This document shows positions 24,230 through 48,458 of a stretch of 64,000 nt of DNA, one piece after another. The notes under the pieces were generated by a model. It saw nothing but the letters and a program-made list of their open reading frames with translations. It did no database searches and was not told the DNA's origin. Numbering within the stretch: the stretch's first letter is position 1; each line of letters begins with the position of its first letter. The stretch lies in the sequence record LR756500.1, one strand, 5' to 3'. Position numbers and translations under genes: made by a program.

Positions 24230-24232
24230 ATT

Positions 24233-28830: not shown

Positions 28831-28863
28831 AATTTAAAATTTTTTATATTAATTTATAAAATA

Positions 28864-28937: not shown

Positions 28938-28940
28938 ATT

Positions 28941-28973
28941 AAAATAGGAATCTAGATTATAAATTCCTATTTT
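28941..28973. terminator. Intrinsic terminator
   Basis: AAAATAGGAAT / ATTCCTATTTT inverted repeat right after ORF 28981-29238. Confidence 0.6.
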
Positions 28974-28980
28974 AAAGTTA

Positions 28981-29238: not shown

Positions 29239-29256
29239 ACCTAATTATAAGTTTCA

Positions 29257-34445: not shown

Positions 34446-35207
34446 TTACACTAACTCTATTCCCATAATTTCTGATAATATTTTACGGCCTCTTGCTATT
34501 CTATTTTTAACTGTTTGTTCTGTAATCATATTCTTTTTAATTTCATCTCTTTCAGATTTAAGAGTATTAAATAAAGTTTTATCTCCATTCGTATATGCTA
34601 CTTTTATTTTATCACATAAATCATTATATTTAGATTTATATTCTTCATTAAATTTTTCTTCTATTTGTCTATAACTTAAACCATTAAGGAATCGTTCTAC
34701 CATTATACATTTATAAATAGGTTTTAAATTATGTATTGCATCTAGTAATTTACTGTATTGATCATCTTTTTCATTTTGTTCTTTTTCATAATCACTATCA
34801 TCTTTAATTTCATCAATATCATGTTCATAAAAATCTGTAAAATTTCTATCTTTTTTACCAATTTCTGAATTATCAGTATTCTCACTAACTTCATATCCAT
34901 ATGATAAAGATACTCTTGAATTTCTTTCTCTTATAAATTGAATTGAATCATGATATGCTATAGTATATAGCCAAGTAGTTATTTGATATGTTTTATCGTA
35001 TTCATCAATTCTAGTATATAATTTAAACATTGTATTAGAAACCACGTCGTTCGCTGCATCTTCATCTTGAACTATTTTTAAAACATAATTTCTTATATTT
35101 GGATATATTTTTTCATATAAATTTTTAAATGCCTCATCACTACGAGTAGTATAAAATTCATTTGCTAATTCAGCATAAGTTACTTTTGATAAATCTAATT
35201 TTGCCAT
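34446..35207 (-). CDS. ECF-like RNA polymerase sigma-70 factor
   Basis: AF..LY.......V......D.D.A.DVVS.T..K....I..YD......TWLY.IA (region 2); LSY.QI and TVKNRIARGR (region 4). Confidence 0.88.
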   Translation of the reverse strand: MAKLDLSKVTYAELANEFYTTRSDEAFKNLYEKIYPNIRNYVLKIVQDEDAANDVVSNTMFKLYTRIDEYDKTYQITTWLYTIAYHDSIQFIRERNSRVSLSYGYEVSENTDNSEIGKKDRNFTDFYEHDIDEIKDDSDYEKEQNEKDDQYSKLLDAIHNLKPIYKCIMVERFLNGLSYRQIEEKFNEEYKSKYNDLCDKIKVAYTNGDKTLFNTLKSERDEIKKNMITEQTVKNRIARGRKILSEIMGIELV

Positions 35208-35236
35208 ATAATTTGCCTTTTTATTGTTATAAAAAT

Positions 35237-35767
35237 TTATAACGTTTGTTTATATTCATTAATTAATTCTTTTATTGTATCTATTTCAACAGGAGCTAAA
35301 TTCCAACAATCTGCGCATACATTAATTCTATTTTCATTTGCTTTATGCGGAAAATCTTTATAATTATGACCGTGAAAATGGAATATTCCATCTTCTTTTC
35401 CATTCCAGTATTCAAGAGGCCAATGACATAAAATAGCTTTTAATTTAGGTAATTCAATTATTTGATCATCATACATTTTTACATTATCATATAATTGAGC
35501 AGATTCTTTTAAAGCTTTATCTGTATTACCGTTTAAAAAATAAATTTTACCTTTTAATTTGCCTAGCATAATATTTGCTATAAAAGGATCCCATGCAAAA
35601 TTTCCTAAATGATAAACTATATCATTATCTTTAACTTTATCGTTCCATAATTTAGTCATTTTTTCATCCATTTCTTCAACTGATTTAAATGGTCTTTTAG
35701 CATGATTAATAATGTTCTTACGACCAAACATCGTATCGGAAGTAAGAAATATTTTAGTTTTACTCAT
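35237..35767 (-). CDS. Calcineurin-like metallophosphoesterase
   Basis: TSDT.FG..NII, WN..V..D.VYHLG.F, GN.D, LCH.P, HFHGH. Confidence 0.85.
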   Translation of the reverse strand: MSKTKIFLTSDTMFGRKNIINHAKRPFKSVEEMDEKMTKLWNDKVKDNDIVYHLGNFAWDPFIANIMLGKLKGKIYFLNGNTDKALKESAQLYDNVKMYDDQIIELPKLKAILCHWPLEYWNGKEDGIFHFHGHNYKDFPHKANENRINVCADCWNLAPVEIDTIKELINEYKQTL

Positions 35768-35769
35768 AA

Positions 35770-36750
35770 TTATCCAAATAATTTAATTTTAATTTGTTTT
35801 TCAGGAGTATTTTCTCCATAATATTCATCATGCCAATCATTAACTAAAGAAAAATCAAATTTGTCAAAATAATCATGTATTTCGCGTTCTTGAAAATTAG
35901 ATAATGAAGTTATTGATTTTTTAAACACTTGTTGTTTATAACTTTTATGCGTTATAACTAATGGCCATTTTTCTTGAAATAAATCATATTCTTTTTTTCT
36001 TATTTCCATTCTTCTATCTCCACCAATTGAACCTTTAGAATTATTAACATTATCTAAAGTTTCAAACTTTCTTTTTCCGTCTTCAAAATTTATTGTTGAC
36101 ATCGGTATAGTATGCATAAATGAAAAATACCTACTAATAATTAAAGGTAAAAATTTATGAGATGCAACCTGCATAGTAAAATCTGTATCTGATCTAAAAT
36201 TTTCAAATCTATTATCATAATTACATTTTTTAGCCACTTTAGTATTTATTATTACTAATTGAGCAGGATTTGAATATAAATTTATATAATTCTTTTGTTG
36301 TTTAGAAAAATGATGTATACTAATAGATGGAACTGTAACTAATCCTATTCTATCTAAGTCTGTTTTCATAACATGTTCTAAAGCTAATAATGTAGGATTA
36401 GATTCAAAAGTTTGTGAATGTTTAACATCATCATCATGATGAATATAATAATCTCCTAATGTACAACCCCAATCTTTAAGATATTTAAATGTATTAATTA
36501 TACCCATTCTAGTTGGATACCATTTAAATTCAACTTGTTTAAATTTTTCAACTAAATATTTTTTATCTTCATCTGAATATTCTTGTCCTAACACATGAAC
36601 ATTTGTTGCATTATAATGTTTAAATAAATTATCTAAACATGCATCAATCATTAACGTTTCTTTCTTATGTTTAGTATATCTTTTTAAAGATGGAATCATT
36701 ATAACTCCATTATATTCAAATCTATCATTTATTTTATTAGACATAATCAA
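35770..36750 (-). CDS. GT-A glycosyltransferase, TAGT / T2-T6 glucosyl-hmC glucosyltransferase-like
   Basis: YIHHDDDV, ..DTDFTMQV, S.GG, L.EKWP motifs. Confidence 0.6.
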   Translation of the reverse strand: MIMSNKINDRFEYNGVIMIPSLKRYTKHKKETLMIDACLDNLFKHYNATNVHVLGQEYSDEDKKYLVEKFKQVEFKWYPTRMGIINTFKYLKDWGCTLGDYYIHHDDDVKHSQTFESNPTLLALEHVMKTDLDRIGLVTVPSISIHHFSKQQKNYINLYSNPAQLVIINTKVAKKCNYDNRFENFRSDTDFTMQVASHKFLPLIISRYFSFMHTIPMSTINFEDGKRKFETLDNVNNSKGSIGGDRRMEIRKKEYDLFQEKWPLVITHKSYKQQVFKKSITSLSNFQEREIHDYFDKFDFSLVNDWHDEYYGENTPEKQIKIKLFG

Positions 36751-36958
36751 TCAATATTTTAGTTTTATGTTTTAAATTAATTTCTTCTTCAAATGATCTA
36801 TATTGAAACCAATAATCTCCAAAAGATTTTTCTTGACCTTCCTTCCAATTCATTTCTATATGTATAATATCATTTATTTCATTTATATTTTTTATACACA
36901 ATAAAGGATATTGTTTTACTAACTCTGATATATTTTCTATTAATTTATTATTTTTCAT
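36737..36958 (-). CDS. Hypothetical protein
   Basis: 73-aa ORF. Confidence 0.5.
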   Translation of the reverse strand: MKNNKLIENISELVKQYPLLCIKNINEINDIIHIEMNWKEGQEKSFGDYWFQYRSFEEEINLKHKTKILIDYV

Positions 36959-37643
36959 CTTTAATCAGTTTAATAAATTCATTTATTCCTTCAGTTGCTT
37001 TACTTTCAATTTTATTTATATACGCATAACCACCTACATTAGGAGTAGGATCAATATAATAAATAGGTTTTAAATCATTAACATATTGTAATAAAGTAGC
37101 AGCTGGATAAACTTGTAATGTTGTTCCAATAATTAAAAAAATATCAGCAGATTTAACAATATTCATAGCATCAGATAATAATGGAACACCCTCTCCAAAC
37201 CAAACTACAGCTGGCCTATATTCATTTAATTTAGAATTAGATAATTCTAAATATCCTATATTTATCCATTTAGAATTATCCATATCATCTTCATATTTTC
37301 GTATTTTTCTTAATTCACCATGAAGATGTAATATGTTTTTACTACCAGCTCTTTCGTGTAAATCATCCACATTTTGTGTTATAATAAATACATTATAATC
37401 TTTTTCTAATTCAACTAATTTAATATGACATTCATTTGGATGTACATTTGCTAATTCAGCTCTTACCGAATTATAAAAGGAATTCATTTCTTCTCTAATA
37501 GAATTCCATCCATTAATAGATGCATAAACTTCTGGATCATATTTTTCCCAAAGTCCACCTTTATCTCGATATGTAGGAATTCCGCTTTCTTGTGAAACAC
37601 CAGCTCCTGTAAATACTACTAAATTTTTCTTATTTTTTCCCAT
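36948..37643 (-). CDS. cobB: Sir2/CobB NAD-dependent deacylase
   Basis: FTGAGVSQESGIPTYRD, TQNVDDLHERAGS, HLHGEL, RPAVVWFGE, IGTTLQVYPAA. Confidence 0.95.
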   Translation of the reverse strand: MGKNKKNLVVFTGAGVSQESGIPTYRDKGGLWEKYDPEVYASINGWNSIREEMNSFYNSVRAELANVHPNECHIKLVELEKDYNVFIITQNVDDLHERAGSKNILHLHGELRKIRKYEDDMDNSKWINIGYLELSNSKLNEYRPAVVWFGEGVPLLSDAMNIVKSADIFLIIGTTLQVYPAATLLQYVNDLKPIYYIDPTPNVGGYAYINKIESKATEGINEFIKLIKDEK

Positions 37644-37941
37644 CTGCTATTTTATATCTTGAAATTAATTTTTTATTTGGTAATACACAATCTTCAATTA
37701 TAGCCGGTTCTCGTGTAGGAATAAACCAAGGAACCCATACATGTCCAGGTGTTTTTTCTTCAACGCTCATTTGCCAATCATTATATTCTTCATTTAAAAA
37801 TATATTTATTTTTTCTATTTTATCTGAATATGTTTTTTTACAATATTCTATAAAATCTTTAACAATAGGTTCTTGTACAAATATAAGATTTCCTTTAGGT
37901 AATTTAGGTAATTTTTCCATTTTATTAAAATAAATCTTCAA
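37630..37941 (-). CDS. Hypothetical protein
   Basis: 103-aa ORF. Confidence 0.55.
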   Translation of the reverse strand: MKIYFNKMEKLPKLPKGNLIFVQEPIVKDFIEYCKKTYSDKIEKINIFLNEEYNDWQMSVEEKTPGHVWVPWFIPTREPAIIEDCVLPNKKLISRYKIADGKK

Positions 37942-39181
37942 TTATATTATCTACCGATTTTGATTCAACTTTATTTTTTTTAGACTTTAAAGTTTTAATA
38001 CTTTTTGTAACATCATGCACTTTATGTAATTCAATTTGAATTGGTGTAACTTTATATTTTTCTTTATTGTCTCGTAATATATTAACCAATTCTTTAGAAT
38101 ATTCTTTATCATTAAAATTAACTGCTTTAAACTGTTCTTCTATTATTTGTTTTCTCATAGAAGGATTACTCTTTATAGCTTTTATTCTTTTTTCTACATC
38201 TTCTCTATTAGATACATAATTAAATTTTTGGCAAATATCTGAATGACCAAATACACGTTTAGTAGGATCTAATTCAATATCAATTAAAGTTATAACAGAA
38301 GCCCATATACTTTGATAACATCTCTGAGGCATATCTCTTCCTTCATACCACTCATCGCCTATAACAACATGAGTATATGTATCATTAGATTTTTCCATAT
38401 AATCTTTAGCATCAACTGACTTTCCATAAATAGGAGGTCTGGGATTACCATTTTTAGAAGCAATATTTAATAAATCTTCTGAATTTATTTTTCCAAACAT
38501 TTCAACATTTATACTATCAGAATATCCAAAATAATATTTAACCATTTTTTTAATTCTTCTATTACCTCGCATTGTCCCTCCATATATTAAATCATAATTT
38601 GGTTTATCATTCATGGATAACGGATTATCAAGACATGGAAATTTTTCGAATGGAAAATGAATAACATCTGCTACTTGTATTTCTGTTTTAGAAATAACTT
38701 CTCTAACATCATCTAATTTATATGGCTGTGAAATATATATTATATCATTTCGTGTTATTTCAATATCTTCTTGTTTATAATTAGAACTCCATTCTTTTCC
38801 TTTAATTGATCCCCAAGTTTGTCTTAATACTAATGCTGGATCACAATAAATATAATAAATTTGACCGACAAATTTATTAATAATGAAATAATTTAAAATT
38901 TGATCCCTAGATTCAGCACCACCAAAATAATTTATGGTTCCGTTCAATATAATTAATGCATCATATTTTCTATCATTAATTTTATCAAAATTATCTTCAA
39001 TATTATAAAAATTAAATGTATTTGGATTATTATCTTTTGCTAAAATTTTTGTATAAATATCTATTTTTGCCCCACCTCTATGTAGAGTTTCAATTATATA
39101 TCTAGCCTCATAATTTCCACCAGATGTATCTCTAGCATCCCATGCTATCCTAGAACCTATTTTAATTACTGCTATTTTCAT
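37925..39181 (-). CDS. bgt: T4-type DNA beta-glucosyltransferase homolog
   Basis: MKIAVI, YDALIILNGTINYFGG (T4: YDRLIVVNSSINFFGG), IYYIYCDP.L.L.Q.W..IK.K.W, LIYGGTMRG..R.KKM..Y.F (T4: VIYGGSFRSG.RE.KM..FLF). Confidence 0.85.
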   Translation of the reverse strand: MKIAVIKIGSRIAWDARDTSGGNYEARYIIETLHRGGAKIDIYTKILAKDNNPNTFNFYNIEDNFDKINDRKYDALIILNGTINYFGGAESRDQILNYFIINKFVGQIYYIYCDPALVLRQTWGSIKGKEWSSNYKQEDIEITRNDIIYISQPYKLDDVREVISKTEIQVADVIHFPFEKFPCLDNPLSMNDKPNYDLIYGGTMRGNRRIKKMVKYYFGYSDSINVEMFGKINSEDLLNIASKNGNPRPPIYGKSVDAKDYMEKSNDTYTHVVIGDEWYEGRDMPQRCYQSIWASVITLIDIELDPTKRVFGHSDICQKFNYVSNREDVEKRIKAIKSNPSMRKQIIEEQFKAVNFNDKEYSKELVNILRDNKEKYKVTPIQIELHKVHDVTKSIKTLKSKKNKVESKSVDNIIEDLF

Positions 39182-39467
39182 ATCTCATTACTTGTTCAAG
39201 TCTACCAAATATTAAATCTACAAATTTATGTGTTGTAGTATCTCTATCATATATTATTTTTGCACCTAATAAATTCATATCGATAATTTGTGGTACATTA
39301 TTAGTTTCATCACAAATAACATCAATATTTTCGTGATTAATTAAAAATATTCCCTTTAAAATTAAAGCAAATCCTTCTCTAAATTCAGCAGTATTAAAAT
39401 AATGAGGATTATTCATTAATTCAGAGTTAACTTTACTATAAATATTTGACACTAATTCTTTTTTCAT
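39162..39467 (-). CDS. Hypothetical protein
   Basis: 101-aa ORF. Confidence 0.55.
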   Translation of the reverse strand: MKKELVSNIYSKVNSELMNNPHYFNTAEFREGFALILKGIFLINHENIDVICDETNNVPQIIDMNLLGAKIIYDRDTTTHKFVDLIFGRLEQVMRYENSSN

Positions 39468-39524
39468 TATATTCTTATTTTATTATTCAGACCTATCTCA
39501 AACTATATTAAATTTAAGATCTAA

Positions 39525-39740
39525 TTATTTGTTAAGTTGGAAGATTCTTGATAGATATTCTTTACTTAAAGTTTCAGCATCTTTTAGTTTACTAAACATT
39601 TCTTCTCTGACATCTTTCAAAGTCCTATCATTTGTTTCAAAACGCGATTGTAGGAAAGTATGAAAATTTATTTTATCTTCATCAGATAATTTATCGTATA
39701 TTTTTTTAATTGCTTCTAAATATGTTAATTTATTTTGCAA
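39525..39740 (-). CDS. Hypothetical protein
   Basis: 71-aa ORF; similar to its neighbour (IY.KLS..DKI.F). Confidence 0.5.
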   Translation of the reverse strand: MQNKLTYLEAIKKIYDKLSDEDKINFHTFLQSRFETNDRTLKDVREEMFSKLKDAETLSKEYLSRIFQLNK

Positions 39741-39949
39741 ATTTGTTTTGTTAAAAATTCAACATTAAAATAAGGTTCTTCTTTATCATTTTTTAATTTT
39801 AATAAATCATTAATAATATCTAATCTTTCATTAATTAATTCTAGATTTTCAACTTCTTGACTTCGTTTAATAAAAAAACCAAATTTTATTTTATCTCTAT
39901 GACTTAATGATTTATATAAATCTTTTATGTCTTCTAATTTATTTTCCAT
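39725..39949 (-). CDS. Hypothetical protein
   Basis: 74-aa ORF (LYKSLS..DKIKF). Confidence 0.5.
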   Translation of the reverse strand: MENKLEDIKDLYKSLSHRDKIKFGFFIKRSQEVENLELINERLDIINDLLKLKNDKEEPYFNVEFLTKQICKIN

Positions 39950-40100
39950 TTTTATCCTCCGTATTTTGTAATTTTTGTTTTAATTCTATTAAAATTTTAT
40001 ATTGATCGTCTGACCAAATTTGAACTTTCTTTTTATTAAAACCTTCATTTTCATCATTTCTATTTCGATCATTATTAGATCTTTCTTTAGTATTTTCCAT

Positions 40101-40604
40101 TTAAAAAATTTTGTTTTGTTTTATTTTATTATTGTTTTTATTATCTAAATATATTATATCTATATCAAAAGGTGATACATAATATTTATTTATTTTATAA
40201 TCAGCATATTTAACTTTGTTTATTTGATAATATATTTTAATATTTGAATTATTTTCTAATGTATACCAAATATATTTAACAGATTTATTATTTAATCTGA
40301 ATTCTTGTCTTTCTTTTATTTTTAAATGATTTTTATCGAATTCAATATATGGTCCATGATCACCTATAACTATTCTATTATATCCTATTACAAAAACTTC
40401 TTTGTTAAAAATTAATAAATTATTTTCAGAAATATTTTGAAATTTATAATATTTATCTAAATATTTTTTATAAATATTTCTTATTATTTGACTATCAATA
40501 TTATCTAAACAATTATAATTTCCTCTATTAATATTTTCCCAATAAAAATTCCAAACTTCTAATTCTTTATTATCTTTAATTTCTTTTAATATAAAATTAT
40601 ACAT
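40101..40604 (-). CDS. Conserved hypothetical protein
   Basis: GYNRIVIGDHGPYIEF, KY.WY, V.YADYK...YYVSP. Confidence 0.65.
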   Translation of the reverse strand: MYNFILKEIKDNKELEVWNFYWENINRGNYNCLDNIDSQIIRNIYKKYLDKYYKFQNISENNLLIFNKEVFVIGYNRIVIGDHGPYIEFDKNHLKIKERQEFRLNNKSVKYIWYTLENNSNIKIYYQINKVKYADYKINKYYVSPFDIDIIYLDNKNNNKIKQNKIF

Positions 40605-41478
40605 TACTTTTTATATTTGTATAAATCCAATTAAATAATTTATCTTCACTTATAAATAATTTATCTTCTAATATACATGAAGTTAAATATTTAAATACAG
40701 AACTCATTTTACCTTTATTATCTATTATATTTAAATCTATTAATGGTAATTCTAAAGGTACAAAAGGATGCGCTAACATTTCATTAATGAGTTCAAAATT
40801 TCGTTGATATATGTGAAGTGAATTATCTATATGTGTATATTTTCCAAGTTGTAAATCATGATATTTATCTTCCTTAAGAAGTTTAAACATTTGTTGATGT
40901 AATAAAGTAAAAAACGCTATATCAGTTGGTAAACCTAATATAGCATCGTTTGACCGCATTTCAACAGTAAAATCTAATTTATTATCTCTAATATGAAATA
41001 TACCTGTTAGTGTACATACAAAATCTTTATTACCTTCAAATTGATGATCTGGTGTATTAAAATGCATTATAGCTTGTCTTGTATCTTTATCAGATATTAA
41101 TGAATCATAAGCCCATTCCCATTGATTTTTATTATGTTCATTTACTCTATTAAATAATAAATATCCATAAGCACTATTAACAGTTAATCCATCAGGATTA
41201 ACTATTTGATTCCAAAATTTTGCGTATTTTGATATAAATTCTATAGTATTATAACCATTAAAATACCATATTAATTCCGCGGAAATATATTGTAATTGAC
41301 TGCCTCTTCTTTCATTTTTATATAATGCTGACAATGGATTTGTTATTTCAATAGATACATTAATATCTTCATTTACATTTTGACCTCTTGGAGATGTAAT
41401 ATATTGAGGATTATAATACAAATCAACTAATATTTTTTTATATGCTAAAGCAAATGTCTGTTCAGTATAAGTTTTCAT
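40597..41478 (-). CDS. Thymidylate-synthase-family enzyme, dCMP hydroxymethylase (T4 gp42)-like
   Basis: EL.WY, VNSAYG (gp42 INSNYG), DTRQAI, DFVCT, MRSNDAILGLPTD with Asp at the dCMP-specificity position (gp42 MRSNDVVFGFRND), SLHIY. Confidence 0.85.
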   Translation of the reverse strand: MKTYTEQTFALAYKKILVDLYYNPQYITSPRGQNVNEDINVSIEITNPLSALYKNERRGSQLQYISAELIWYFNGYNTIEFISKYAKFWNQIVNPDGLTVNSAYGYLLFNRVNEHNKNQWEWAYDSLISDKDTRQAIMHFNTPDHQFEGNKDFVCTLTGIFHIRDNKLDFTVEMRSNDAILGLPTDIAFFTLLHQQMFKLLKEDKYHDLQLGKYTHIDNSLHIYQRNFELINEMLAHPFVPLELPLIDLNIIDNKGKMSSVFKYLTSCILEDKLFISEDKLFNWIYTNIKSNV

Positions 41479-42114
41479 TACTGATTAGCTTTTAATATTA
41501 TATTTTTTATTTGATTATTAATTTCTTCAGGTGTATGATTAGAAACATTTATAAGATATTTATGATAAATTTTACTTTTATTAAAAGCTTCTTCAAATGC
41601 TTCTTTTTCTATTTTAACTTCTTCTACATTTTTATAAAATGATAAACCATCATCTCTTTTAAGAATTGTTTCTGGATCATTTACAAATACAAACATAAAT
41701 AAATTATCTTTTAATTCATTTACATATTGTTTTTCTATATCTAAAATATAATCACCAGAATATTTTCTATATAAAGGAGCATATACCAATTCTCCTAAAT
41801 GACTCCTATCAAAAATATAATTATAAGAATTATTAGAAAACAAATCTGATGACATTTTATTATTTATACTTTCTATCATCATTGTAAACATTTGATTGTA
41901 TAAAGTAGTAGAATAATTTATATGTTCTTCGTCTTTATTGAAAGGTAATCCACTATAATGAAATGTTTGAAATACATTTCCTTTTCCTAAAATATCAGAA
42001 GCTTGTATAAGTTTTATTTGAGTTCCTTTACCTGTATTGTACTCAGTCTGGCCCTTCCATAATAATATGCAATGGAAGGGCCAGATTTTTAATTTTATTT
42101 TTTATTTTGTTCAT
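41478..42114 (-). CDS. tmk: Thymidylate/dNMP kinase interrupted by a 7-nt insert containing TGA in the P-loop
   Basis: IIMEGPD-[TGAGTAC]-NTGKGTQ; downstream frame open through DRSHLGELVY. Confidence 0.7.
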
Positions 42115-42140
42115 ATTTTAAATATTTTTCTTGTGTTATT

Positions 42141-42758
42141 TTATCGAATATTATTAATTTCTGCTTTATTATCAATAAAGGATTCTATAGTACCCTTATT
42201 TTTTTCTTCTTTAACGTTTTCTTCTACTAAAATTAAGTCTCTATAATTAGGATATCTTTTAATTAAAATTTCTAACATTTTAATATCATTATGTTCTCTT
42301 ATTTCTTCTGATTTTAATTTTTTTATTTTTTCTTCTTCAATATGAGCTAACTCAACCTCTTTTCTAAGAAGTTCTATAACTTTCCAATCTTTATGTGTTT
42401 TAATTAAAACATCTGCATTTTCATGATTATGAATTAATTCAATATTAAAATAAAGTTCTTTAATATTAGAATTTAAAGTATTATAACTTGATTGTAATGG
42501 TAAAAATTGTGATAAATATTTATTAATATCTATATCAGCATATAAATCTATATTTAATTCATTAATTACATTATATTTAATAATATAAAAAGAATATTCA
42601 TAATAAGCTAATTTATTTTGGTTTTCTATTTCAGTTAATAAAATATTAATAATTTCTTCAACATTTGAACCTTTTATTACAATTTCATTATCATAAAATT
42701 TAGTATATCCTTTTAATTGAAATTCACTCTTGTAATTTAATGCTAATTTATTTTCCAT
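42141..42758 (-). CDS. Hypothetical protein
   Basis: 205-aa ORF. Confidence 0.65.
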   Translation of the reverse strand: MENKLALNYKSEFQLKGYTKFYDNEIVIKGSNVEEIINILLTEIENQNKLAYYEYSFYIIKYNVINELNIDLYADIDINKYLSQFLPLQSSYNTLNSNIKELYFNIELIHNHENADVLIKTHKDWKVIELLRKEVELAHIEEEKIKKLKSEEIREHNDIKMLEILIKRYPNYRDLILVEENVKEEKNKGTIESFIDNKAEINNIR

Positions 42759-42805
42759 AATTTTTATTAATTTTATTATATTATATGCACAATATTATAT
42801 TTTGT

Positions 42806-43099
42806 TTAAATTTTATTAAATAATTTTTCAATTATTAATTCCGTTTCTTTTATATCGTCTTCAGTAGGTATAGGAACAATATTAACTTCAAAGATTGGAC
42901 CTTTTTCTACTTTTCCATTATCTATTATTTTGCCCATCGCTCTTAATGATATATTTAAAGTTTGTCCAAATTTTTCCTTTATTTCATTAAACAATGAGTT
43001 GTTAGTAATTTTAAAATTTATTAGTGTATTATTACTTTCATCAAATTCAGTCCAGCCGACAATCTGTTCTATATATTTAACAGGTACTAATCCGTTCAT
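42806..43099 (-). CDS. Hypothetical, weakly like a degenerate prohead protease fragment
   Basis: ISLRAMG.I resembles the gp21 GxSSRG.G motif. Confidence 0.4.
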   Translation of the reverse strand: MNGLVPVKYIEQIVGWTEFDESNNTLINFKITNNSLFNEIKEKFGQTLNISLRAMGKIIDNGKVEKGPIFEVNIVPIPTEDDIKETELIIEKLFNKI

Positions 43100-43100
43100 C

Positions 43101-43847
43101 TTATTTTATATTATTGAAATAATTATTAATTTCATTTAATTCACTTTCAGTATTAAAACTTTTTGTTAAAAATTTATCATCTAATATTAATAAATGAGCA
43201 GGTTCATTTATATTCCATAAATAATGAACAATATCTAAAAATATTAATTCTTTATTTATATACTTTCCATTTTTATCTAAAACATTATGAGCAGTTAATA
43301 AATGATTATAAAAATTATTATTTATCACAAATATAGATTGATCGTGATATCCATCCGAAATTTTATCACCTCTTTTACTAAACATTGCTTGTTCTGCTTT
43401 ATTGTCTGAAAATTTAAACCATACATACGGATTTTTTTCATATATTACAGGTATAGTAAGACTAGTAGTAGTTTTAATATTTGATATATTTTCAAACAAT
43501 TCTTTATTTGAAAAATAAGTATCTCCCCAACAAATAGAAATATTATCATATACATTAGTATCTATAAATCCTAATGTTTCTAATATTGCATGCCCACAAC
43601 CTCTTCCTGATTTAATAGGTATTAAATGTATTTTATCATCTAAATCTATATAATTATGTATAACTTCTTTATAAAGATCAAAATTTGTATGATTAGAGGC
43701 AATTATAATTTGATCATAAAATTCATAAGCATTTTCTATAGTATGCAATAAATTTGGTTTACCGTTTATTAAAGATATCGCTTTAGGCAAATATCCCATT
43801 CTTGAACTGTCACCAGCCGCTATTATAAGTAATACTTTTTTATTCAT
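43101..43847 (-). CDS. NTP-transferase (nucleotidyltransferase, MobA/GlmU-like fold)
   Basis: LIIAAG.SSRMG.LPK, GCGHA, I.WGD, FNT..EL. Confidence 0.82.
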   Translation of the reverse strand: MNKKVLLIIAAGDSSRMGYLPKAISLINGKPNLLHTIENAYEFYDQIIIASNHTNFDLYKEVIHNYIDLDDKIHLIPIKSGRGCGHAILETLGFIDTNVYDNISICWGDTYFSNKELFENISNIKTTTSLTIPVIYEKNPYVWFKFSDNKAEQAMFSKRGDKISDGYHDQSIFVINNNFYNHLLTAHNVLDKNGKYINKELIFLDIVHYLWNINEPAHLLILDDKFLTKSFNTESELNEINNYFNNIK

Positions 43848-44244
43848 TAGTAATGAGATCGAATGTAAATATTTTTTTAAAAATTATTTCTTGTTCATTT
43901 TGTGTGCCTGTAGATCTAATTCCAACTCTTAAATCATCTAAAATTTCTTTTGCTATATTACCTTTAGGTGTTTTTAATATTTCTAAATTAACATAAATTT
44001 CATTATCATTTTCATAATAAATGTCTGTTATAAGATGAGATACATTAGCTAAAGAAATTTCAAATTCAGTAGGATTATATAATTCTCCTAATAATGTTTT
44101 ATTTTTAATTTTTTCTTTTAAGTGTTCTATATTTTGTTTTAGACTTTCCTTATTAACATTTACCCATCTAGGTTCTGTTAAATCTAATGCTAATGCTTTA
44201 TAAGCAATAGGAATTAATTTATATTTTTCTTTATTCATTTTCAA
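43840..44244 (-). CDS. Short gp21/S77 prohead protease paralog, probably inactive
   Basis: LLGELYNP, VSHLI, EIL.TP.G..AK, GIRSTG. Confidence 0.7.
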   Translation of the reverse strand: MKMNKEKYKLIPIAYKALALDLTEPRWVNVNKESLKQNIEHLKEKIKNKTLLGELYNPTEFEISLANVSHLITDIYYENDNEIYVNLEILKTPKGNIAKEILDDLRVGIRSTGTQNEQEIIFKKIFTFDLITNE

Positions 44245-44701
44245 TAATTAAATTTGTAAAATATCTTTTTTTAATTTCAAAAAAATTATTTTTAGAATTT
44301 GAATATTTTTTTACAGTATCTTTATCACAATATCCAGCAAATATAATATTTATTTCATTATGTGATATATTTTCAATTTGCATTAATGCAATATAATCAA
44401 ATGTTAATTTTTTAAAATAAACATTATCGTGATATGTAGCTCTATTTGTTTTAACATCTATTTTAAATCCAGCATGTATAAAATCATATCCACCATCACC
44501 TTTAACATTATTAGTATAATTTATTTCTGATACTTTATCTTCAAATAATTTTTTATACGCTAATTCACCTAATTTGCCTATAATAATATCTTTCTTAACT
44601 TTTCGTTTTTCTCTATATTGAGCATTATGATTATTGAAAGATTTATTTGCAAATTCAAATAAATCTTTCAATTCATTTCGTTTTATTTGTATTTTTATCA
44701 T
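44231..44701 (-). CDS. Restriction-endonuclease-like PD-(D/E)xK protein
   Basis: G.LGE.A, DGGYDF...G.KIDVKT. Confidence 0.65.
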   Translation of the reverse strand: MIKIQIKRNELKDLFEFANKSFNNHNAQYREKRKVKKDIIIGKLGELAYKKLFEDKVSEINYTNNVKGDGGYDFIHAGFKIDVKTNRATYHDNVYFKKLTFDYIALMQIENISHNEINIIFAGYCDKDTVKKYSNSKNNFFEIKKRYFTNLIIENE

Positions 44702-45077
44702 AATTGCTTTTAAATAATTCTATAAATTCAGGATAAAACCATCCTTTAAAATTTTTATCTTTTTCTAATTTTAAAATAAAATCATAAGACTCTTTAGATC
44801 CTATTTGTACATGTAATGTTTTAAGTTCTCTTTCACTTTCACGAAGTTTAATATGATCATTAGAAAAATTTCTAGCAATTTTATAAATATCTTTTGGATC
44901 AGGAGCATTATCAGGATTATGAACACGCTTCCAAATGAGATTATGAATATAAGCACTTGCTGTTTTAGTATGATAATCTGTTTTAACTTCTTCTGAATAT
45001 TCACGTTTAACAATATAATAGTATTGTAATTCTCCTATTGCTCCATCTTGTAATTCAAAAAATCCATCTTCTATCAT
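44673..45077 (-). CDS. Hypothetical protein
   Basis: 134-aa ORF. Confidence 0.55.
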   Translation of the reverse strand: MIEDGFFELQDGAIGELQYYYIVKREYSEEVKTDYHTKTASAYIHNLIWKRVHNPDNAPDPKDIYKIARNFSNDHIKLRESERELKTLHVQIGSKESYDFILKLEKDKNFKGWFYPEFIELFKSNYDKNTNKTK

Positions 45078-45078
45078 T

Positions 45079-46917
45079 TTACGAAATTAATTTTAAAAGT
45101 TTCAATGTATCATGTGGATTATTGACATCATATACAATAGTTGTTTTAACTTCTCTAAATACTGAATCGTTTCCTTTTTCTAATTCATCTCCGACGAATA
45201 AAATTGATGCGTCTTTAAATCTATTATATTCAAATATAACTAATTTACTATATCCTTTATGCATTATGTCTATAGTAGATCTTCCATTTAATTTAATTTC
45301 ATATTTATCTCCAATTAATACTTCTAAATCTTTCGCCTTTATTATTCTTTCATTTTCTTTAAATCGTCTAAATGAAATAATCACATTATTTCTATTTTCA
45401 AATTTATATACTGGTATATTACATTTAACTGCAGCATTATAAATTTCATTAATTTGATCATTTGTTAATACATATTTATTAGTTAAGTAATGCGAAAAAA
45501 TATATTCTCTTTTCTTATTATCCCATACACATTTACTATTTCCACCATCACAAAATAACTCGTTTTTATAATCACCAGAAGTATTACAATATTTTTTAAG
45601 TTGTTTATTAATGTGCTCAACAGAATTACCAGTTAAAATTGAAAATTCTGGATTTTTATATATTATTTCTAGATTATGTCTAGATTCGTTAATAAATGAA
45701 TCCTCGTATCTAGATACTAAAGTACCATCAAAATCAAATATAATTTTATCTTTATTAATTAATTCTGTATAATAATTTCTAATAATTATTTTGGCTAAAA
45801 GATCACCATTATGTACACTTGCAATAGTTAGAGAATAAGGATCATTAATAATATCTTCTGTTATAATATCATTAGTTAAAGCAGTTTCAATATATTTAAA
45901 AGAAGGATCAATTTTTCGCATACTTTCATGAGCATTAGAATTAACTATAGTTATTATGTCTTCTAATGGAAGATATTTATTTAGAATATGTTGCATTTGA
46001 CCAGCATTTATGCCTTTCATATCGCTATCTTGTACATTATTCATAATTAAAAATTTTAAAGCTTTTGATTCTTTAATAATTTTTTTGAAGTCTTTATGTT
46101 TATAAGTAGGTATTAAAGAGGACCACTGTGTACCAGGTCCAAAAGTTATGATATCTGCTTCTTTAATTTTTTCTAAAACTTCATTAGAAATTTCGGGAAT
46201 TACTTCTTCATTTTTATTATTTACCAATCTAATATCTACTATAGGATCATCTTCATTATCCCATTTAACAATAATTGCTTCATCTAATAGTAATTTACCA
46301 GATTTAGTAAATGCTTGTAAATATAAACTAACATCTGATATTAATAATACTCTATCTTCAAGTATTCTAAATACCTCTTTAGCCATTATCTTACCAGCAG
46401 TCGCTAATGAAAAATTATTCAATCCAGCTAAACCTGCATATATCATGTTAGCAATAGAAAAATTATTAAATGATATTAAATCTATATTCCTTTGAGAAAA
46501 GAAACTATCTACAGCAGGATTAATTATATTATCTAAAATATTTAAATTTAATGTTTTATCTTCTTCATTAAATGAACAATTATTAATAATTTCTTTTTTT
46601 ATTTCTAATAACATTTCATTAATATGATTAAAACTAGCATCTTTAGAATTTAAATCTATTCTTTTAAATAAAAAACCTTTAATTAAATTAGCAAGTGGAC
46701 TATTATCGATAAATCCATATGCGTATTCTTGATTTTTTCTTAAATCTGAAGGTCCTAATATTTTACCATCATAATTTTTTCTAACTTCTCCTGTTGATAA
46801 TCCATTATCATAACAATTAGTTATTAAAGTTAAAGTTAAATCTTTATCAAGAAGTCTATCTAATCCATTTTGTAGAGTTATTGTACCTCCACCACCTGTA
46901 AATGATACTATTTTCAT
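45079..46917 (-). CDS. CofD/YvcK-family transferase fused to a HAD-IIB phosphatase
   Basis: GGGG..L..GL, T.YDNG.STG..R, GPSDLRKN, ADII.FGPGT.WSSLIP; C-terminal FDFDGTL, LTGN, K, FVGDE..GND. Confidence 0.8.
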   Translation of the reverse strand: MKIVSFTGGGGTITLQNGLDRLLDKDLTLTLITNCYDNGLSTGEVRKNYDGKILGPSDLRKNQEYAYGFIDNSPLANLIKGFLFKRIDLNSKDASFNHINEMLLEIKKEIINNCSFNEEDKTLNLNILDNIINPAVDSFFSQRNIDLISFNNFSIANMIYAGLAGLNNFSLATAGKIMAKEVFRILEDRVLLISDVSLYLQAFTKSGKLLLDEAIIVKWDNEDDPIVDIRLVNNKNEEVIPEISNEVLEKIKEADIITFGPGTQWSSLIPTYKHKDFKKIIKESKALKFLIMNNVQDSDMKGINAGQMQHILNKYLPLEDIITIVNSNAHESMRKIDPSFKYIETALTNDIITEDIINDPYSLTIASVHNGDLLAKIIIRNYYTELINKDKIIFDFDGTLVSRYEDSFINESRHNLEIIYKNPEFSILTGNSVEHINKQLKKYCNTSGDYKNELFCDGGNSKCVWDNKKREYIFSHYLTNKYVLTNDQINEIYNAAVKCNIPVYKFENRNNVIISFRRFKENERIIKAKDLEVLIGDKYEIKLNGRSTIDIMHKGYSKLVIFEYNRFKDASILFVGDELEKGNDSVFREVKTTIVYDVNNPHDTLKLLKLIS

Positions 46918-47192
46918 TTTAAAATTGTTAAAATTATCATATTAATAATTGCGAATATAAACCAATACATTAAATATTCATTAGTATCCGAATTAAATTT
47001 TATACTAAATTCTTCTTGAGATATCTCTTTTATTATTTTATATCCCATATAATTATATTCTATATTATTTGAATCAATATAAACATTTTTATTATTACTA
47101 TTTTGAATAGCCTCATCTATTAATTTATCAGTTCCATTTATATTCAGATAATACTGATCTTTATTTTGTATTTTAATTTTTTTCATAATCAA
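46914..47192 (-). CDS. Small membrane-anchored protein
   Basis: C-terminal hydrophobic helix. Confidence 0.5.
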   Translation of the reverse strand: MIMKKIKIQNKDQYYLNINGTDKLIDEAIQNSNNKNVYIDSNNIEYNYMGYKIIKEISQEEFSIKFNSDTNEYLMYWFIFAIINMIILTILK

Positions 47193-47878
47193 AAATCGGG
47201 ATTTGTAATTCTTATATCGTAAGTTGTAAAATTTTCAAAATCTAATTCATCTGCTTCTAATCTTCTATTTAAACTATCACCTGGCATTTTTCTTTGTGCT
47301 AATCTAGTTTTTCTAACAGTTTTAGGTATGTCAAAATACATTATAAAACAATTTTTTCTATCAGCTTGTGAAATTTTAGATATACCAGATGGTGTCATTA
47401 TAAAAATATCATCTTTATAAAATTGTTGTTTTGATGTTCCATAATGCCATCCATTAAAACTAACGTATTCATACCAAAACCTTGATTGTATTTTTTCTTC
47501 AAAATCTTTATTTGAAATAAAAACATAATCTTTATTATTTACTTCTCCATCTCTTGGTGGCCTAGTAGTATACGATGTAGCATACACATATCCTTTATCT
47601 TCAAATAATTTTCTAGCATAATCTTTGCCAGATGCAGCTGCTCCTACTAATATTATTCTTTTATGATTTCTATAAAAATATTTTACTTCTATTGTGCATG
47701 TTTGCATACTTCTAGCAACTGGTAAAATATTAATTTCTTGAATATCAACCATTATAGGATCTAAACCATTTCTAATTAAATTTTTTTCTAATATAATATT
47801 AGTCAATTTATTATTTCTATCATATTTTTCAAATAAGCTAGAATCATCTTTTGATATTATAAAAGTTGTAGATAACAT
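47189..47878 (-). CDS. gmk: Guanylate kinase-like protein with N-terminal extension
   Basis: VGAAASGKD, SYTTRPPRDGE.N.KDY.F, YGTS, RRL.AD. Confidence 0.85.
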   Translation of the reverse strand: MLSTTFIISKDDSSLFEKYDRNNKLTNIILEKNLIRNGLDPIMVDIQEINILPVARSMQTCTIEVKYFYRNHKRIILVGAAASGKDYARKLFEDKGYVYATSYTTRPPRDGEVNNKDYVFISNKDFEEKIQSRFWYEYVSFNGWHYGTSKQQFYKDDIFIMTPSGISKISQADRKNCFIMYFDIPKTVRKTRLAQRKMPGDSLNRRLEADELDFENFTTYDIRITNPDF

Positions 47879-48402
47879 TATATTTTCATTTTAAAATTAT
47901 GTTGTTTAATAATTGCTAATATAGCTTCTGCATTTCCTTTTGCATCGTCTAAAGCATTATGTGTATGCTTGGTTTTTCTTAAATGTTTAAAAGAAGCATA
48001 ATAATCTCCTGCTATACCTTTATATAGTGATGTTAAACTTGTACAACTAAATCCAAAGGGATTTGATTGAGTATAATGATTTAAATACCAACACATAAAC
48101 ATCCAATCAAATCCAGCATTATCTGCTATCATTCTAGGTTGTCCTATATTTGTTTTTAAAATCCAGTCTTTGAATTCAAGCATAACATCTAATGGATTTC
48201 TAAACGTTATACATTGATCTCTGGTAAATCCTGATACTGATAATGCTTCTGGAATCCATTTTTGTGAAATAGGTTTAAGTTCTGTGTAAAATGTTTTGTC
48301 TAATTTTCCTTCTTTATCTATCATTACAGCACCAAACGAAATCATTGAATAGTCACCAGGTATAGGGCCATCAGCCTCTACATCTATTGAGAAAAAACTC
48401 AT
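47878..48402 (-). CDS. DEDDh 3'-5' exonuclease
   Basis: SIDVEADGP, MISFGAV, N.GFDW.F, H.H.ALDDA. Confidence 0.88.
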   Translation of the reverse strand: MSFFSIDVEADGPIPGDYSMISFGAVMIDKEGKLDKTFYTELKPISQKWIPEALSVSGFTRDQCITFRNPLDVMLEFKDWILKTNIGQPRMIADNAGFDWMFMCWYLNHYTQSNPFGFSCTSLTSLYKGIAGDYYASFKHLRKTKHTHNALDDAKGNAEAILAIIKQHNFKMKI

Positions 48403-48458
48403 AGTTATTTAATTTTAAATTTATTTAATTATAAGGGAATAATTAATTTAGTTTCGCA

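What the first reader, a model, noticed from the sequence alone, without database searches (positions are those of the whole stretch)
35770..41478. Candidate glycosyl-hydroxymethylcytosine DNA hypermodification system in a Bacteroidota jumbo phage
The TS-family enzyme has Asp instead of Asn at the substrate-specificity position (MRSNDAILGLPTD versus T4 gp42 MRSNDVVFGFRND), pointing to dCMP as substrate. Nearby are a recognisable T4 beta-glucosyltransferase homolog, a second GT-A enzyme resembling TAGT or T2/T6 second-sugar transferases, and a dNMP kinase. T4-type BGT is mostly known from enterobacterial T-even phages. The pairing suggests mono- or disaccharide-modified cytosine, possibly with a non-glucose sugar given the sugar-activation genes nearby.
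Basis: partly seen in the sequence, partly recalled or inferred. Interest (0 to 1): 0.75.

Follow-up and report, generated by a model that had tools for sequence, protein, structure and literature searches.

The report
Phage genes for sugar-modified DNA cytosine
A 462-kb uncultured groundwater phage carries intact genes that most likely turn its DNA cytosine into sugar-coated hydroxymethylcytosine, the T4-style disguise against bacterial nucleases, but within a larger, undescribed gene module shared with other jumbo phages.

Summary
The core observation holds. Window 40597-41478(-) encodes a thymidylate-synthase homolog with the full 5-hydroxymethyl-dCMP-synthase signature, not that of a thymidylate or 5-hydroxy-dCMP synthase. 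37925-39181(-) is a clear T4 beta-glucosyltransferase (BGT) homolog with catalytic and UDP-phosphate residues kept. 35770-36750(-) is an orphan protein with a GT-A fold and an invariant DDD motif.

Corrections:
- The "dNMP kinase" is a thymidylate-kinase-like gene broken by 7 nt and an in-frame TGA inside its P-loop.
- No T4-type dCTPase or MazG was found in the 462-kb genome.
- BGT homologs are not confined to T-even phages.

New here: the hydroxymethylase and BGT belong to a module conserved in at least six divergent jumbo-phage contigs, including cultured Ralstonia phage RsoM2USA. Its other members are a YvcK/CofD-like + phosphomannomutase-like fusion (45079-46917), a nucleotidyltransferase (43101-43847) and a guanylate-kinase-like enzyme (47189-47878). 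The likeliest role is phage-encoded sugar-donor supply. No searched paper links these genes to DNA modification.

Verdict: a real, probably functional hmC-glycosylation system and a new variant of a known kind. The chemistry is untested, and the sugar and the extent of cytosine replacement are unknown.

The parts
47189..47878 (-). Guanylate-kinase-like NMP kinase (229 aa) with P-loop GAAASGKD and the TTRPPRDGE nucleotide-binding motif. It is the candidate kinase for hm-dCMP, or a recycler of NMP.
   Evidence: PHROG guanylate kinase 2.2e-33. TIGR03263 1.9e-20, below its cutoff. Orthologs sit beside the nucleotidyltransferase in L111, L114 and L116, and are present in L112. Sequence.
45079..46917 (-). 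Fusion protein (612 aa). The N-terminal domain is YvcK/CofD-like (PF01933). The C-terminal domain is a HAD-IIB, eukaryotic-type phosphomannomutase / alpha-phosphoglucomutase-like domain with intact DxDxT, K and GND motifs.
   Evidence: TIGR01826 8e-20 and HAD-IIB 7e-5. Model pLDDT 92. Foldseek: YvcK family 2hzb 1.5e-14 (TM 0.75 by the target; 0.78 for 2o2z, same protein); atypical alpha-PGM 4bnd 5e-10; CofD/FbiA about 1e-8. Invariant D395, D397, T399, K558. Co-occurs with the hydroxymethylase-type TS and BGT in RsoM2USA, L010, L111, L112, L114 and L116.
43101..43847 (-). Nucleotidyltransferase (248 aa) of the NTP_transf_3 / GlmU-N / IspD-like kind. It probably makes the activated (NDP-linked) donor.
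   Evidence: GlmU N-terminal domain 3.6e-9, ribitol-5-P cytidylyltransferase 4.6e-9. Orthologs lie directly after the fusion gene in L111, L112, L114 and L116, and also in bacterial polysaccharide clusters L113, L115 and L117.
41478..42114 (-). Thymidylate-kinase-like (AAA_28) kinase gene, interrupted. It runs ATG 42114, 23 codons ending in GPD, then TGA at 42045-42043. The frame resumes at 42038 with NTGKGT. The 7 nt at 42045-42039 split the Walker A motif.
   Evidence: phrog_761 2.5e-8 for the C-terminal part only. Intact homologs: 212 aa in L010, 209 aa RsoM2USA gp6, 192 aa in L116. An independent contig of the source run at depth 54 carries the same letters.
42048..42084 (-). Very stable hairpin inside the kinase coding sequence, ending just before the in-frame TGA. 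The arms are 13 nt and perfectly complementary; the predicted stem has 14 pairs.
   Evidence: dG -26.7 kcal/mol, z -5.7, and 0 of 200 shuffles fold as well. The arms are unique in the window.
40597..41478 (-). Thymidylate-synthase-family enzyme with the 5-hydroxymethyl-dCMP synthase signature, read in E. coli ThyA numbering. Cys146 is kept, Leu143 is Asp, Asp169 is kept, Asn177 is Asp, and Ser167 and Arg126 are of the deoxyribose type.
   Evidence: Diagnostic positions come from PMC13326640 and PMC5175136. It is the only ThyA-family gene in the genome, and a ThyX is present elsewhere.
40101..40604 (-). 167-aa ORF of unknown function. Its start overlaps the end of the hydroxymethylase gene by 8 nt.
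   Evidence: No PHROG or NCBIfam hit. No usable atlas hit. No counterpart in L010.
37925..39181 (-). T4 beta-glucosyltransferase homolog (GT-B, PF09198), 418 aa.
   Evidence: 1bgt 4.3e-33. phrog_7922 2e-52. E22, D100, G188, R191, R195, Y261 and R269 are conserved; E272 is Q. It is 42-47% identical to the BGTs of the module in other jumbo phages.
36948..37643 (-). Sir2-family NAD-dependent deacylase-like gene lying between BGT and the GT-A gene. It is not part of the conserved module; relatives carry a MazG-like gene and two other ORFs at this position.
   Evidence: phrog_2162 2e-47, NF001753 7e-53. Comparison with L010.
35770..36750 (-). Orphan GT-A-fold glycosyltransferase (326 aa) with invariant D104-D105-D106. 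It may transfer a second sugar onto DNA; the acceptor is unproven.
   Evidence: The motif and TarP resemblance match phage DNA GT-A enzymes described in preprint 10.1101/2023.12.21.572611. Its position after BGT is conserved in L009-L011.
35237..35767 (-). Metallophosphoesterase (176 aa), a conserved neighbour. A paralog sits next to the kinase in the relative L010. It may act on nucleotides; this is inference only.
   Evidence: phrog_547 1.8e-35. L010 homologs at 10995-11525 and 4911-5453.

Best explanation
This is a pre-replicative plus post-replicative cytosine hypermodification system of the T4 type.

1. [quoted passage not shown]
2. A phage or host kinase raises it to the triphosphate. 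The guanylate-kinase-like enzyme is the likeliest phage candidate, because the thymidylate-kinase-like gene is broken here.
3. The phage polymerase incorporates it into DNA.
4. The BGT homolog then transfers a hexose from an NDP-sugar onto the hydroxymethyl group in DNA.
5. The upstream fusion protein (phosphohexomutase-like HAD domain plus a UDP-sugar-binding YvcK-like domain) and the adjacent nucleotidyltransferase most likely make that NDP-sugar donor in the infected cell.
6. The lineage-specific GT-A enzyme may add a further sugar.

Shown: homology, active-site signatures, folds and conserved gene neighbourhood. Inferred: every chemical step, the identity of the sugar, and how much cytosine is replaced.
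For: - Hydroxymethylase signature D/C/S/D/D, identical to T4 gp42. It differs from RB69 5-hydroxy-dCMP synthase (N at the ThyA-169 position) and from a true ThyA in the related contig L112 (L...N) (rules).
- PDB ranking is hydroxymethylases above synthases.
- The genome has a separate ThyX for dTMP and no second ThyA.
- The BGT homolog keeps catalytic and UDP-phosphate residues.
- Hydroxymethylase, BGT, fusion, nucleotidyltransferase and guanylate-kinase-like gene lie within about 10-17 kb of one another in the window, L111, L112, L114 and L116. RsoM2USA and L010 show the first three plus the TMK-like kinase.
- The fusion's C-terminal domain folds like alpha-phosphoglucomutase / PMM with intact HAD catalytic motifs. 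Its N-terminal domain folds like UDP-sugar-binding YvcK.
- Bacterial homologs of the fusion and nucleotidyltransferase sit in polysaccharide clusters, where donor synthesis is expected.
- Phage-encoded donor synthesis has a precedent in RB69 and DLP3.
Against: - No biochemical or mass-spectrometry data exist for this phage or for any carrier of the module.
- The thymidylate-kinase-like gene is interrupted in the P-loop.
- No T4 gp56-type, MazG-type or PRA-PH-type NTP pyrophosphatase was found in the 462-kb record. dCTP exclusion, and hence full replacement, is therefore unsupported.
- BGT Glu272 is Gln and two uracil-contacting positions differ, so the donor nucleotide may not be UDP.
- The YvcK/CofD domain has no assigned catalytic role in a donor pathway.
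- The GT-A gene borders a separate glycan (Kdo) cluster and could belong to that instead.
Confidence: 0.6

Rival explanations
1. The system goes beyond glycosyl-hmC. The CofC-like nucleotidyltransferase and the CofD-like domain act as in coenzyme F420 synthesis: they activate a phospho-compound on a nucleotide and transfer it as a phosphodiester onto a hydroxyl. Here the acceptor would be hmC or its sugar. The reaction releases NMP, which the adjacent guanylate-kinase-like enzyme recycles.
For: - The CofD-family domain, NTP_transf_3 and guanylate kinase genes are contiguous or overlapping in L111, L114 and L116.
- An NMP kinase fits an NMP-releasing transfer better than a Leloir glycosyl transfer.
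- Bacterial homologs lie beside Glyphos_transf or LicD phosphotransferase genes in teichoic-acid-like clusters.
- No searched paper assigns a function to these phage genes.
Against: - The N-terminal domain is structurally closer to non-catalytic UDP-sugar-binding YvcK (1.5e-14, TM 0.75 for 2hzb, up to 0.78 for 2o2z) than to CofD/FbiA (about 1e-8, TM 0.6).
- The HAD domain resembles phosphohexomutases, which fits plain NDP-sugar synthesis.
- The kinase may simply phosphorylate hm-dCMP.
Confidence: 0.13
2. In this particular phage the module is decaying. With the kinase broken and no dCTPase, little or no hmC reaches DNA, and the remaining genes are relics or have been put to other uses.
For: - A 7-nt interruption with an in-frame TGA in Walker A is supported by a depth-54 contig of the source run.
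- The relatives' MazG-like gene is absent and replaced by other ORFs.
- No NTP pyrophosphatase was found.
Against: - The hydroxymethylase, BGT, GT-A, fusion, nucleotidyltransferase and guanylate-kinase-like genes are all full-length, with catalytic residues conserved.
- In L111 and L114 no thymidylate-kinase-like homolog was seen within the 10 kb shown on each side, so the guanylate-kinase-like enzyme may suffice.
- A dUTPase-family protein of 187 aa exists elsewhere in the genome.
Confidence: 0.12
3. The enzyme is an ordinary thymidylate synthase or a dUMP hydroxymethylase, and the glycosyltransferases act on cell-surface or virion glycans rather than on DNA.
For: PHROG and NCBIfam name the family 'thymidylate synthase'. 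A large glycan-synthesis cluster lies 5-18 kb away.
Against: - Asp stands at the ThyA Asn177 position and Asp at the Leu143 position.
- All NCBIfam TS scores are far below their cutoffs (55 against 327 bits).
- ThyX is present.
- A related contig carries both a true ThyA and the Asp-type enzyme.
- In every phage context read here (T-even phages, the Enterococcus phage nattely, RsoM2USA and the metagenomic contigs) the BGT homolog lies near an Asp-type TS homolog. This does not hold for four IMG/VR contigs where none was found within 8 kb.
Confidence: 0.04
4. The base made is 5-hydroxycytosine, as in RB69 and DLP3, and is then glycosylated through an ether link.
For: The enzyme family is the same, with Asp at the 177 position and an acidic residue at the 143 position, both shared with 5-hydroxy-dCMP synthases.
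Against: All tested 5-hydroxy-dCMP synthases have Asn at the ThyA Asp169 position. The window enzyme keeps Asp, as T4 gp42 does. Its closest PDB relatives are hydroxymethylases.
Confidence: 0.04

Closest known systems
T4 / T-even glucosyl-hydroxymethylcytosine system (gp42 dCMP hydroxymethylase, gp1 dNMP kinase, gp56 dCTPase, alpha- and beta-glucosyltransferases)
   Same: - The hydroxymethylase is homologous and has an identical active-site signature.
- The BGT is homologous, with the catalytic Asp100 and Glu22 and the UDP-phosphate arginines kept.
- The two genes lie close together, as gene 42 and b-gt do in T4.
   Different: - Identity is only 27-29% to T-even BGTs; no figure was computed for gp42.
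- There is no gp56-type dCTPase, no gp1-family kinase and no alpha-GT.
- The kinases are of the TMK-like (broken) and guanylate-kinase-like types.
- Phage-encoded putative donor-synthesis genes are present.
- There is an extra orphan GT-A enzyme.
- The host is probably Bacteroidota, and the genome is 462 kb at 22% GC.
Ralstonia jumbo phage RsoM2USA genes 1, 2, 6 and 10 (function not studied)
   Same: It has the same gene set within 8.5 kb: the YvcK/CofD-PMM fusion (35% identity), BGT (46%), the TMK-like kinase (37%) and the Asp-type TS homolog (36%). It is the only cultured phage among 50,697 records that carries the fusion.
   Different: - Its kinase is intact.
- It also has a true Td thymidylate synthase and an NTP pyrophosphatase elsewhere.
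- No GT-A homolog was found in its first 15.6 kb.
- The published description lists gene 2 under signal transduction and does not discuss DNA modification.
RB69 / DLP3 arabosyl-5-hydroxycytosine system (Lee et al., NAR 2026)
   Same: A TS-homolog makes a modified dCMP, a phage dNMP kinase follows, the phage encodes its own NDP-sugar synthesis, and DNA glycosyltransferases are clustered.
   Different: The diagnostic residue differs (Asp here, Asn there), so the expected base is 5hmC rather than 5hoC. The glycosyltransferases and donor enzymes are unrelated.
TET/5mYOX- and ThyS-associated phage DNA glycosyltransferases (GT-A with R..DDD..EDY/F motifs; preprint 10.1101/2023.12.21.572611)
   Same: The 326-aa protein has a GT-A fold, an invariant DDD motif, TarP as its top PDB neighbour, and TET-associated glycosyltransferases among its top viral fold matches.
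   Different: It matches no sequence family. TM scores are only about 0.45-0.5, no better than for generic GT2 enzymes. Its acceptor is unknown.
Enterococcus siphophages VPE25 / VFW / nattely
   Same: An Asp-type TS homolog and a BGT homolog lie about 0.5 kb apart. Their DNA resists bisulfite conversion at cytosines (PMC4999554).
   Different: These are small (86 kb) Gram-positive phages without the fusion, nucleotidyltransferase and guanylate-kinase set (one search shows only a weak partial hit in one Enterococcus phage).

Membership tests
dCMP hydroxymethylase branch of the thymidylate synthase superfamily | Thymidylate-synthase fold and family homology | tested here: met
   phrog_160 9e-37. 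PDB MilA 6.6e-27, T4 dCMP hydroxymethylase 1.9e-18.
dCMP hydroxymethylase branch of the thymidylate synthase superfamily | Catalytic Cys (T4 Cys148), Glu60, and His216/Tyr218 for the sugar | tested here: met
   All are conserved in the alignment.
dCMP hydroxymethylase branch of the thymidylate synthase superfamily | Asp instead of Asn at ThyA position 177 (cytosine specificity) | tested here: met
   GLPTD aligns with T4 GFRND. The rule is stated in PMC13326640.
dCMP hydroxymethylase branch of the thymidylate synthase superfamily | Acidic residue at ThyA Leu143 (water access), and Asp kept at ThyA 169 (Asn marks 5-hydroxy-dCMP synthases) | tested here: met
   Asp in KDFVC and Asp in RSND. RB69 gp48 has E and N.
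dCMP hydroxymethylase branch of the thymidylate synthase superfamily | Deoxyribose-type Ser and Arg (MilA has Ala176 and Lys133 for ribose) | tested here: met
   Ser in MRSND and Arg in DTRQ.
dCMP hydroxymethylase branch of the thymidylate synthase superfamily | Enzymatic conversion of dCMP to 5hm-dCMP | not testable with these tools
   Needs an enzyme assay or an in vivo LC-MS assay.
T4 beta-glucosyltransferase family (PF09198, GT-B) | Full-length sequence homology to T4 BGT | tested here: met
   1bgt 4.3e-33 over residues 62-355. PHROG profile matched over residues 1-355. Orthologs in related contigs (L009-L011, L111, L112, L114, L116) carry PF09198.
T4 beta-glucosyltransferase family (PF09198, GT-B) | Catalytic base Asp100 and Glu22; UDP-phosphate ligands Arg191, Arg195 and Arg269 | tested here: met
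   All are conserved. The identity of Asp100 is supported by the D100A mutant entry 1nzd seen. The residue roles come from established knowledge of T4 BGT structures.
T4 beta-glucosyltransferase family (PF09198, GT-B) | Ribose- and uracil-contacting residues (Glu272, Ile238, Met240) that imply UDP-glucose as donor | tested here: inconclusive
   Glu272 is Gln, Ile238 is Val and Met240 is Ala. The donor cannot be read from this.
T4 beta-glucosyltransferase family (PF09198, GT-B) | Transfer of glucose to 5hmC in duplex DNA | not testable with these tools
   Needs an in vitro assay on hmC DNA.
Phage DNA GT-A glycosyltransferases (TET-associated / base-J glucosyltransferase-like) | GT-A fold with a DDD metal/donor motif | tested here: met
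   pLDDT 81. TarP 1.6e-6. Invariant D104-D106. Motif description.
Phage DNA GT-A glycosyltransferases (TET-associated / base-J glucosyltransferase-like) | Sequence-level membership (profile match) | tested here: not met
   No PHROG, NCBIfam, Pfam or PDB sequence hit. The TET-associated glycosyltransferase resemblance is fold-level only and no better than for generic GT2.
T2/T6-type beta-glucosyl-HMC alpha-glucosyltransferase | Homology to the annotated second-sugar transferase next to b-gt in T6-like phages | tested here: not met
   hhalign probability 1.6% against Erwinia phage COW86c gene 39.
Complete T4-type dC-replacement pathway | dCTPase of the gp56 type or another NTP pyrophosphatase | tested here: not met
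   phrog_173, phrog_671 and the relative's MazG have no match in LR756500.1. Only dUTPase-family proteins were found.
Complete T4-type dC-replacement pathway | Intact phage dNMP kinase | tested here: inconclusive
   The gp1 family gives only weak P-loop matches. The TMK-like gene is interrupted. The guanylate-kinase-like gene is intact, but its substrate is unknown.

The most novel reading that the evidence does not exclude
The hydroxymethylase and BGT are only part of a conserved jumbo-phage module that also includes the YvcK/CofD-PMM fusion, a CofC/IspD-like nucleotidyltransferase and a guanylate-kinase-like enzyme. This module may make a DNA base more elaborate than glucosyl-hmC. Candidates are a non-glucose hexose from a phage-made donor, or a phosphodiester-linked, teichoic-acid-like substituent on the sugar. 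Such a base would be present in cultured Ralstonia phage RsoM2USA and in many uncultured huge phages.
Probability: 0.2. Interest if true: 0.8.

Novelty: new variant of a known kind. Interest (0 to 1): 0.55.

Why it matters
- Modified cytosines decide whether restriction enzymes, CRISPR nucleases and DNA glycosylases can attack a phage. They also affect how such genomes are sequenced and cloned.
- This locus places a T4-style hmC-glycosylation pathway in huge environmental phages of a different host phylum.
- It ties that pathway to a set of partner genes never linked to DNA modification in the papers searched: a YvcK/CofD-phosphomutase fusion, a nucleotidyltransferase and a guanylate-kinase-like enzyme.
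- One cultured phage, RsoM2USA, carries the same set, so the chemistry can be tested directly.
- If the partners only supply the donor, this shows how jumbo phages free themselves from the host UDP-glucose pool. If they add a further group, it is a new DNA base.

Tried and rejected
- No whole genome is held for the window. I searched the public record LR756500.1 through a locus handle instead, and did not read the record at the place of the window's masked 21 N (53906-53926).
- T4 gp56 family, a PRA-PH/NTP-pyrophosphatase family and the relative's MazG: no match in the 462-kb record.
- T4 gp1 family: only weak P-loop matches. One of them is a dephospho-CoA-kinase-like ORF.
- Similarity of the GT-A protein to the T6-type second-sugar transferase: none.
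- The 167-aa ORF after the hydroxymethylase: no family, no atlas lead.
- My first idea, that the hairpin at 42048-42084 was an inserted non-coding element or terminator, was dropped. Both arms encode residues colinear with the homolog, and the real break is the 7 nt after it.
- Promoter and terminator scan of 35000-48500: no more sites than in shuffles, so uninformative in 22% GC DNA.
- Four more distant BGT-bearing IMG/VR contigs show no hydroxymethylase within 8 kb by BLAST, so they were not used.
- The second groundwater sample (X3) does not cover the break, so the 7-nt interruption lacks independent-sample support. The nearest IMG/VR record G001 is identical there and is probably the same data.
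- Literature: no paper mentions LR756500, and none links CofD/YvcK with phage cytosine modification.

Full report
**What the window is.** The window is identical to part of LR756500.1, an unannotated 462,018-bp 'uncultured phage' record. The DNA occurs in groundwater metagenome runs. GC content is about 22% and essentially all genes lie on the minus strand. The closest cellular homologs of its KdsA gene (48-57% identity) are almost all Bacteroidota, with some Ignavibacteriota. A Bacteroidota or FCB-group host is therefore a reasonable inference, not a demonstration.

**The thymidylate-synthase homolog (40597-41478, minus).**
- By sequence the protein is closer to solved cytosine hydroxymethylases than to any thymidylate synthase. 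MilA scores 6.6e-27, T4 gp42 1.9e-18, and the best synthase 3.6e-11. All NCBIfam synthase models score far below their cutoffs.
- I read four published diagnostic positions from alignments with T4 gp42, RB69 gp48 and others.
  - The catalytic Cys is kept.
  - ThyA Asn177 is Asp, which marks cytosine as substrate.
  - ThyA Leu143 is Asp, which allows water access and a product other than methyl.
  - ThyA Asp169 is kept. Lee et al. 2026 showed that every tested 5-hydroxy-dCMP synthase has Asn there.
- The two positions that make MilA prefer ribo-CMP (Ala176, Lys133) are Ser and Arg here, as in deoxy-specific enzymes.
- The genome has no second ThyA-family gene. It does have a ThyX gene, split by an intein-like insert, which can supply dTMP.
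- A related contig (L112) carries both a true ThyA (Leu...Asn) and the Asp-type enzyme, which serves as an internal control.
- The signature therefore points to 5-hydroxymethyl-dCMP synthesis. Activity itself is untested.

**The BGT homolog (37925-39181, minus).**
- It matches T4 BGT at 4.3e-33 and the PHROG family at 2e-52.
- Glu22, Asp100, Gly188, Arg191, Arg195, Tyr261 and Arg269 are conserved. Glu272 is Gln and two uracil-side positions differ. The enzyme looks active, but the donor nucleotide-sugar cannot be read off.
- The family is not confined to T-even phages. It comprises about 270 clusters at 50% identity in 1.84 billion representative proteins.
- It occurs in Enterococcus siphophages whose cytosines resist bisulfite and in Ralstonia jumbo phage RsoM2USA.

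**The GT-A protein (35770-36750, minus).**
- It has no sequence-family match and only 13 relatives, all in related phage contigs.
- The alignment-based model (pLDDT 81) is a GT-A fold. TarP is the top PDB neighbour. Viral GT2 and TET-associated glycosyltransferases are among the top viral matches.
- D104-D105-D106 are invariant. A preprint on phage DNA glycosyltransferases describes exactly this combination of DDD motif and TarP as nearest structure.
- TM scores are modest, however. There is no similarity to the T6-type second-sugar transferase.
- The gene borders a separate glycan cluster, so DNA as its acceptor is an inference from position only.

**The kinase.**
- The 137-aa ORF is the C-terminal part of a thymidylate-kinase-like gene. 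Intact homologs are 192-212 aa.
- In the window the gene starts at ATG 42114 and encodes 23 residues ending in ..EGPD. It then meets TGA at 42045-42043.
- The homologous reading resumes at 42038 with NTGKGT. Seven nucleotides thus split the Walker A motif.
- A contig assembled independently from the source run at depth 54 has the same letters. A second sample does not cover the site.
- The gene is most likely dead in this phage.
- A very stable hairpin ends right before the stop. Omitting exactly the 7 nt restores perfect colinearity. I therefore note, without support, the alternative of a short translational bypass.

**Missing parts.** No gp56-type dCTPase, MazG or PRA-PH pyrophosphatase was found in the whole record, although relatives have one next to BGT or the kinase. 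Only dUTPase-family proteins are present. Complete replacement of cytosine is therefore not supported.

**The wider module.**
- Relatives at 43-65% protein identity for the module genes (L009-L011) keep the same gene order over the roughly 20 kb compared.
- Further afield, the same genes recur together in divergent phage contexts.
  - The Asp-type hydroxymethylase, BGT (42-47% identity), the 612-aa fusion, the NTP_transf_3 nucleotidyltransferase and the guanylate-kinase-like gene occur together in L111 (368 kb), L112, L114 (343 kb) and L116.
  - Cultured RsoM2USA has the fusion, BGT, the TMK-like kinase and the hydroxymethylase as genes 1, 2, 6 and 10.
- All phage contexts of the fusion that I sampled carry BGT and the hydroxymethylase. 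The three bacterial contexts are cell-surface polysaccharide or teichoic-acid-like clusters.
- RsoM2USA is the only one of 50,697 phage records with the fusion. Its description does not mention DNA modification.
- The fusion's model (pLDDT 92) has two domains.
  - The N-terminal domain resembles UDP-sugar-binding YvcK proteins more than CofD/FbiA.
  - The C-terminal domain resembles eukaryotic-type phosphomannomutase / alpha-phosphoglucomutase. Its HAD catalytic motifs are invariant.
- With the adjacent GlmU-N/IspD-like nucleotidyltransferase, the simplest reading is phage-encoded synthesis of the NDP-sugar donor. This parallels the donor genes of RB69.
- A less likely but more novel reading uses CofC/CofD-type chemistry, a phosphodiester transfer that releases NMP. 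The contiguous NMP kinase would fit that.

**Verdict.** The hmC-plus-glycosylation interpretation is well supported at the level of homology, signatures and conserved context. It needs three corrections: the kinase is broken, no dCTPase was found, and the GT-A acceptor is uncertain. It also needs extending upstream to 47878. This is a new variant of a known kind, and there is a testable chance of new chemistry.

Noticed in passing
window 17896-31265 (minus strand): - This is a large glycan-synthesis cluster containing a complete CMP-Kdo route: a KdsD-like isomerase domain (17896-19122), KdsB (19107-19829) and KdsA (20088-20861).
- It also has two methyltransferases, a GT2 (22214-23029) and an 836-aa protein with a GT4-like domain. 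The homolog of that protein in L010 carries a faint MptE/Maf-like Pfam hit.
- A 206-aa ORF has a relative annotated as sialyltransferase-family (PF00777). There is also a DegT-type sugar aminotransferase (29257-30345).
- The cluster more likely glycosylates surface or virion targets than DNA.
   Followed up: partly
window 42039-42084 (minus strand): A unique, very stable hairpin (dG -26.7 kcal/mol, z -5.7) lies inside the kinase coding sequence and ends one base before the in-frame TGA. Skipping exactly 7 nt restores the homolog's P-loop. The last codon before the break is GAC and the codon just before the resumed frame is TAC. This is either a recent insertion or, speculatively, a short translational bypass.
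   Followed up: partly
LR756500.1 276509-278146 (outside the window; loci L103 and L104): A 572-aa ORF carries two halves of ThyX (model positions 18-86 and 86-210) separated by about 330 residues with HNH-like motifs. It is a flavin-dependent thymidylate synthase with an intein-like insert.
   Followed up: partly
window 36948-37643 (minus strand): A Sir2-family NAD-dependent deacylase-like gene sits between BGT and the GT-A gene, where relatives carry a MazG-like gene and two small ORFs. RsoM2USA also encodes a Sir2-like protein elsewhere.
   Followed up: no
window 14331-16878 (minus strand): A GIY-YIG 'group I intron endonuclease'-type ORF (16063-16878, 1e-36) lies directly upstream of a DinG/Rad3-like helicase gene (14331-16070). 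It may be a homing endonuclease.
   Followed up: no
window 6160-7821 (minus strand): A cluster of five tRNA genes: Leu-TAG, Trp-CCA, Val-TAC, Glu-TTC and His-GTG.
   Followed up: no
L108 (Xanthomonas phage Xp15) and L110 (Bacillus phage G): Other Asp-type TS homologs sit beside different tailoring enzymes. In Xp15 the neighbour is a carbamoyltransferase, which fits the published 5-carbamoyloxymethylcytosine system. In the 497-kb phage G the neighbours are an alpha-glucosyltransferase, a thymidylate kinase and a dCMP deaminase.
   Followed up: partly
L010 19-522 and 5450-5968; L116 8189-8662: Nucleoside 2-deoxyribosyltransferase-family genes (PF05014/PF15891; per established knowledge, the family of the hm-CMP hydrolase MilB) lie next to the hydroxymethylase or BGT in relatives. 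BLAST found no counterpart in window 15000-52000.
   Followed up: no
window 53906-53926: A stretch of 21 N, an assembly gap or deliberately masked, lies inside a 300-aa ORF region. It was left untouched and was not looked up in the public record.
   Followed up: no
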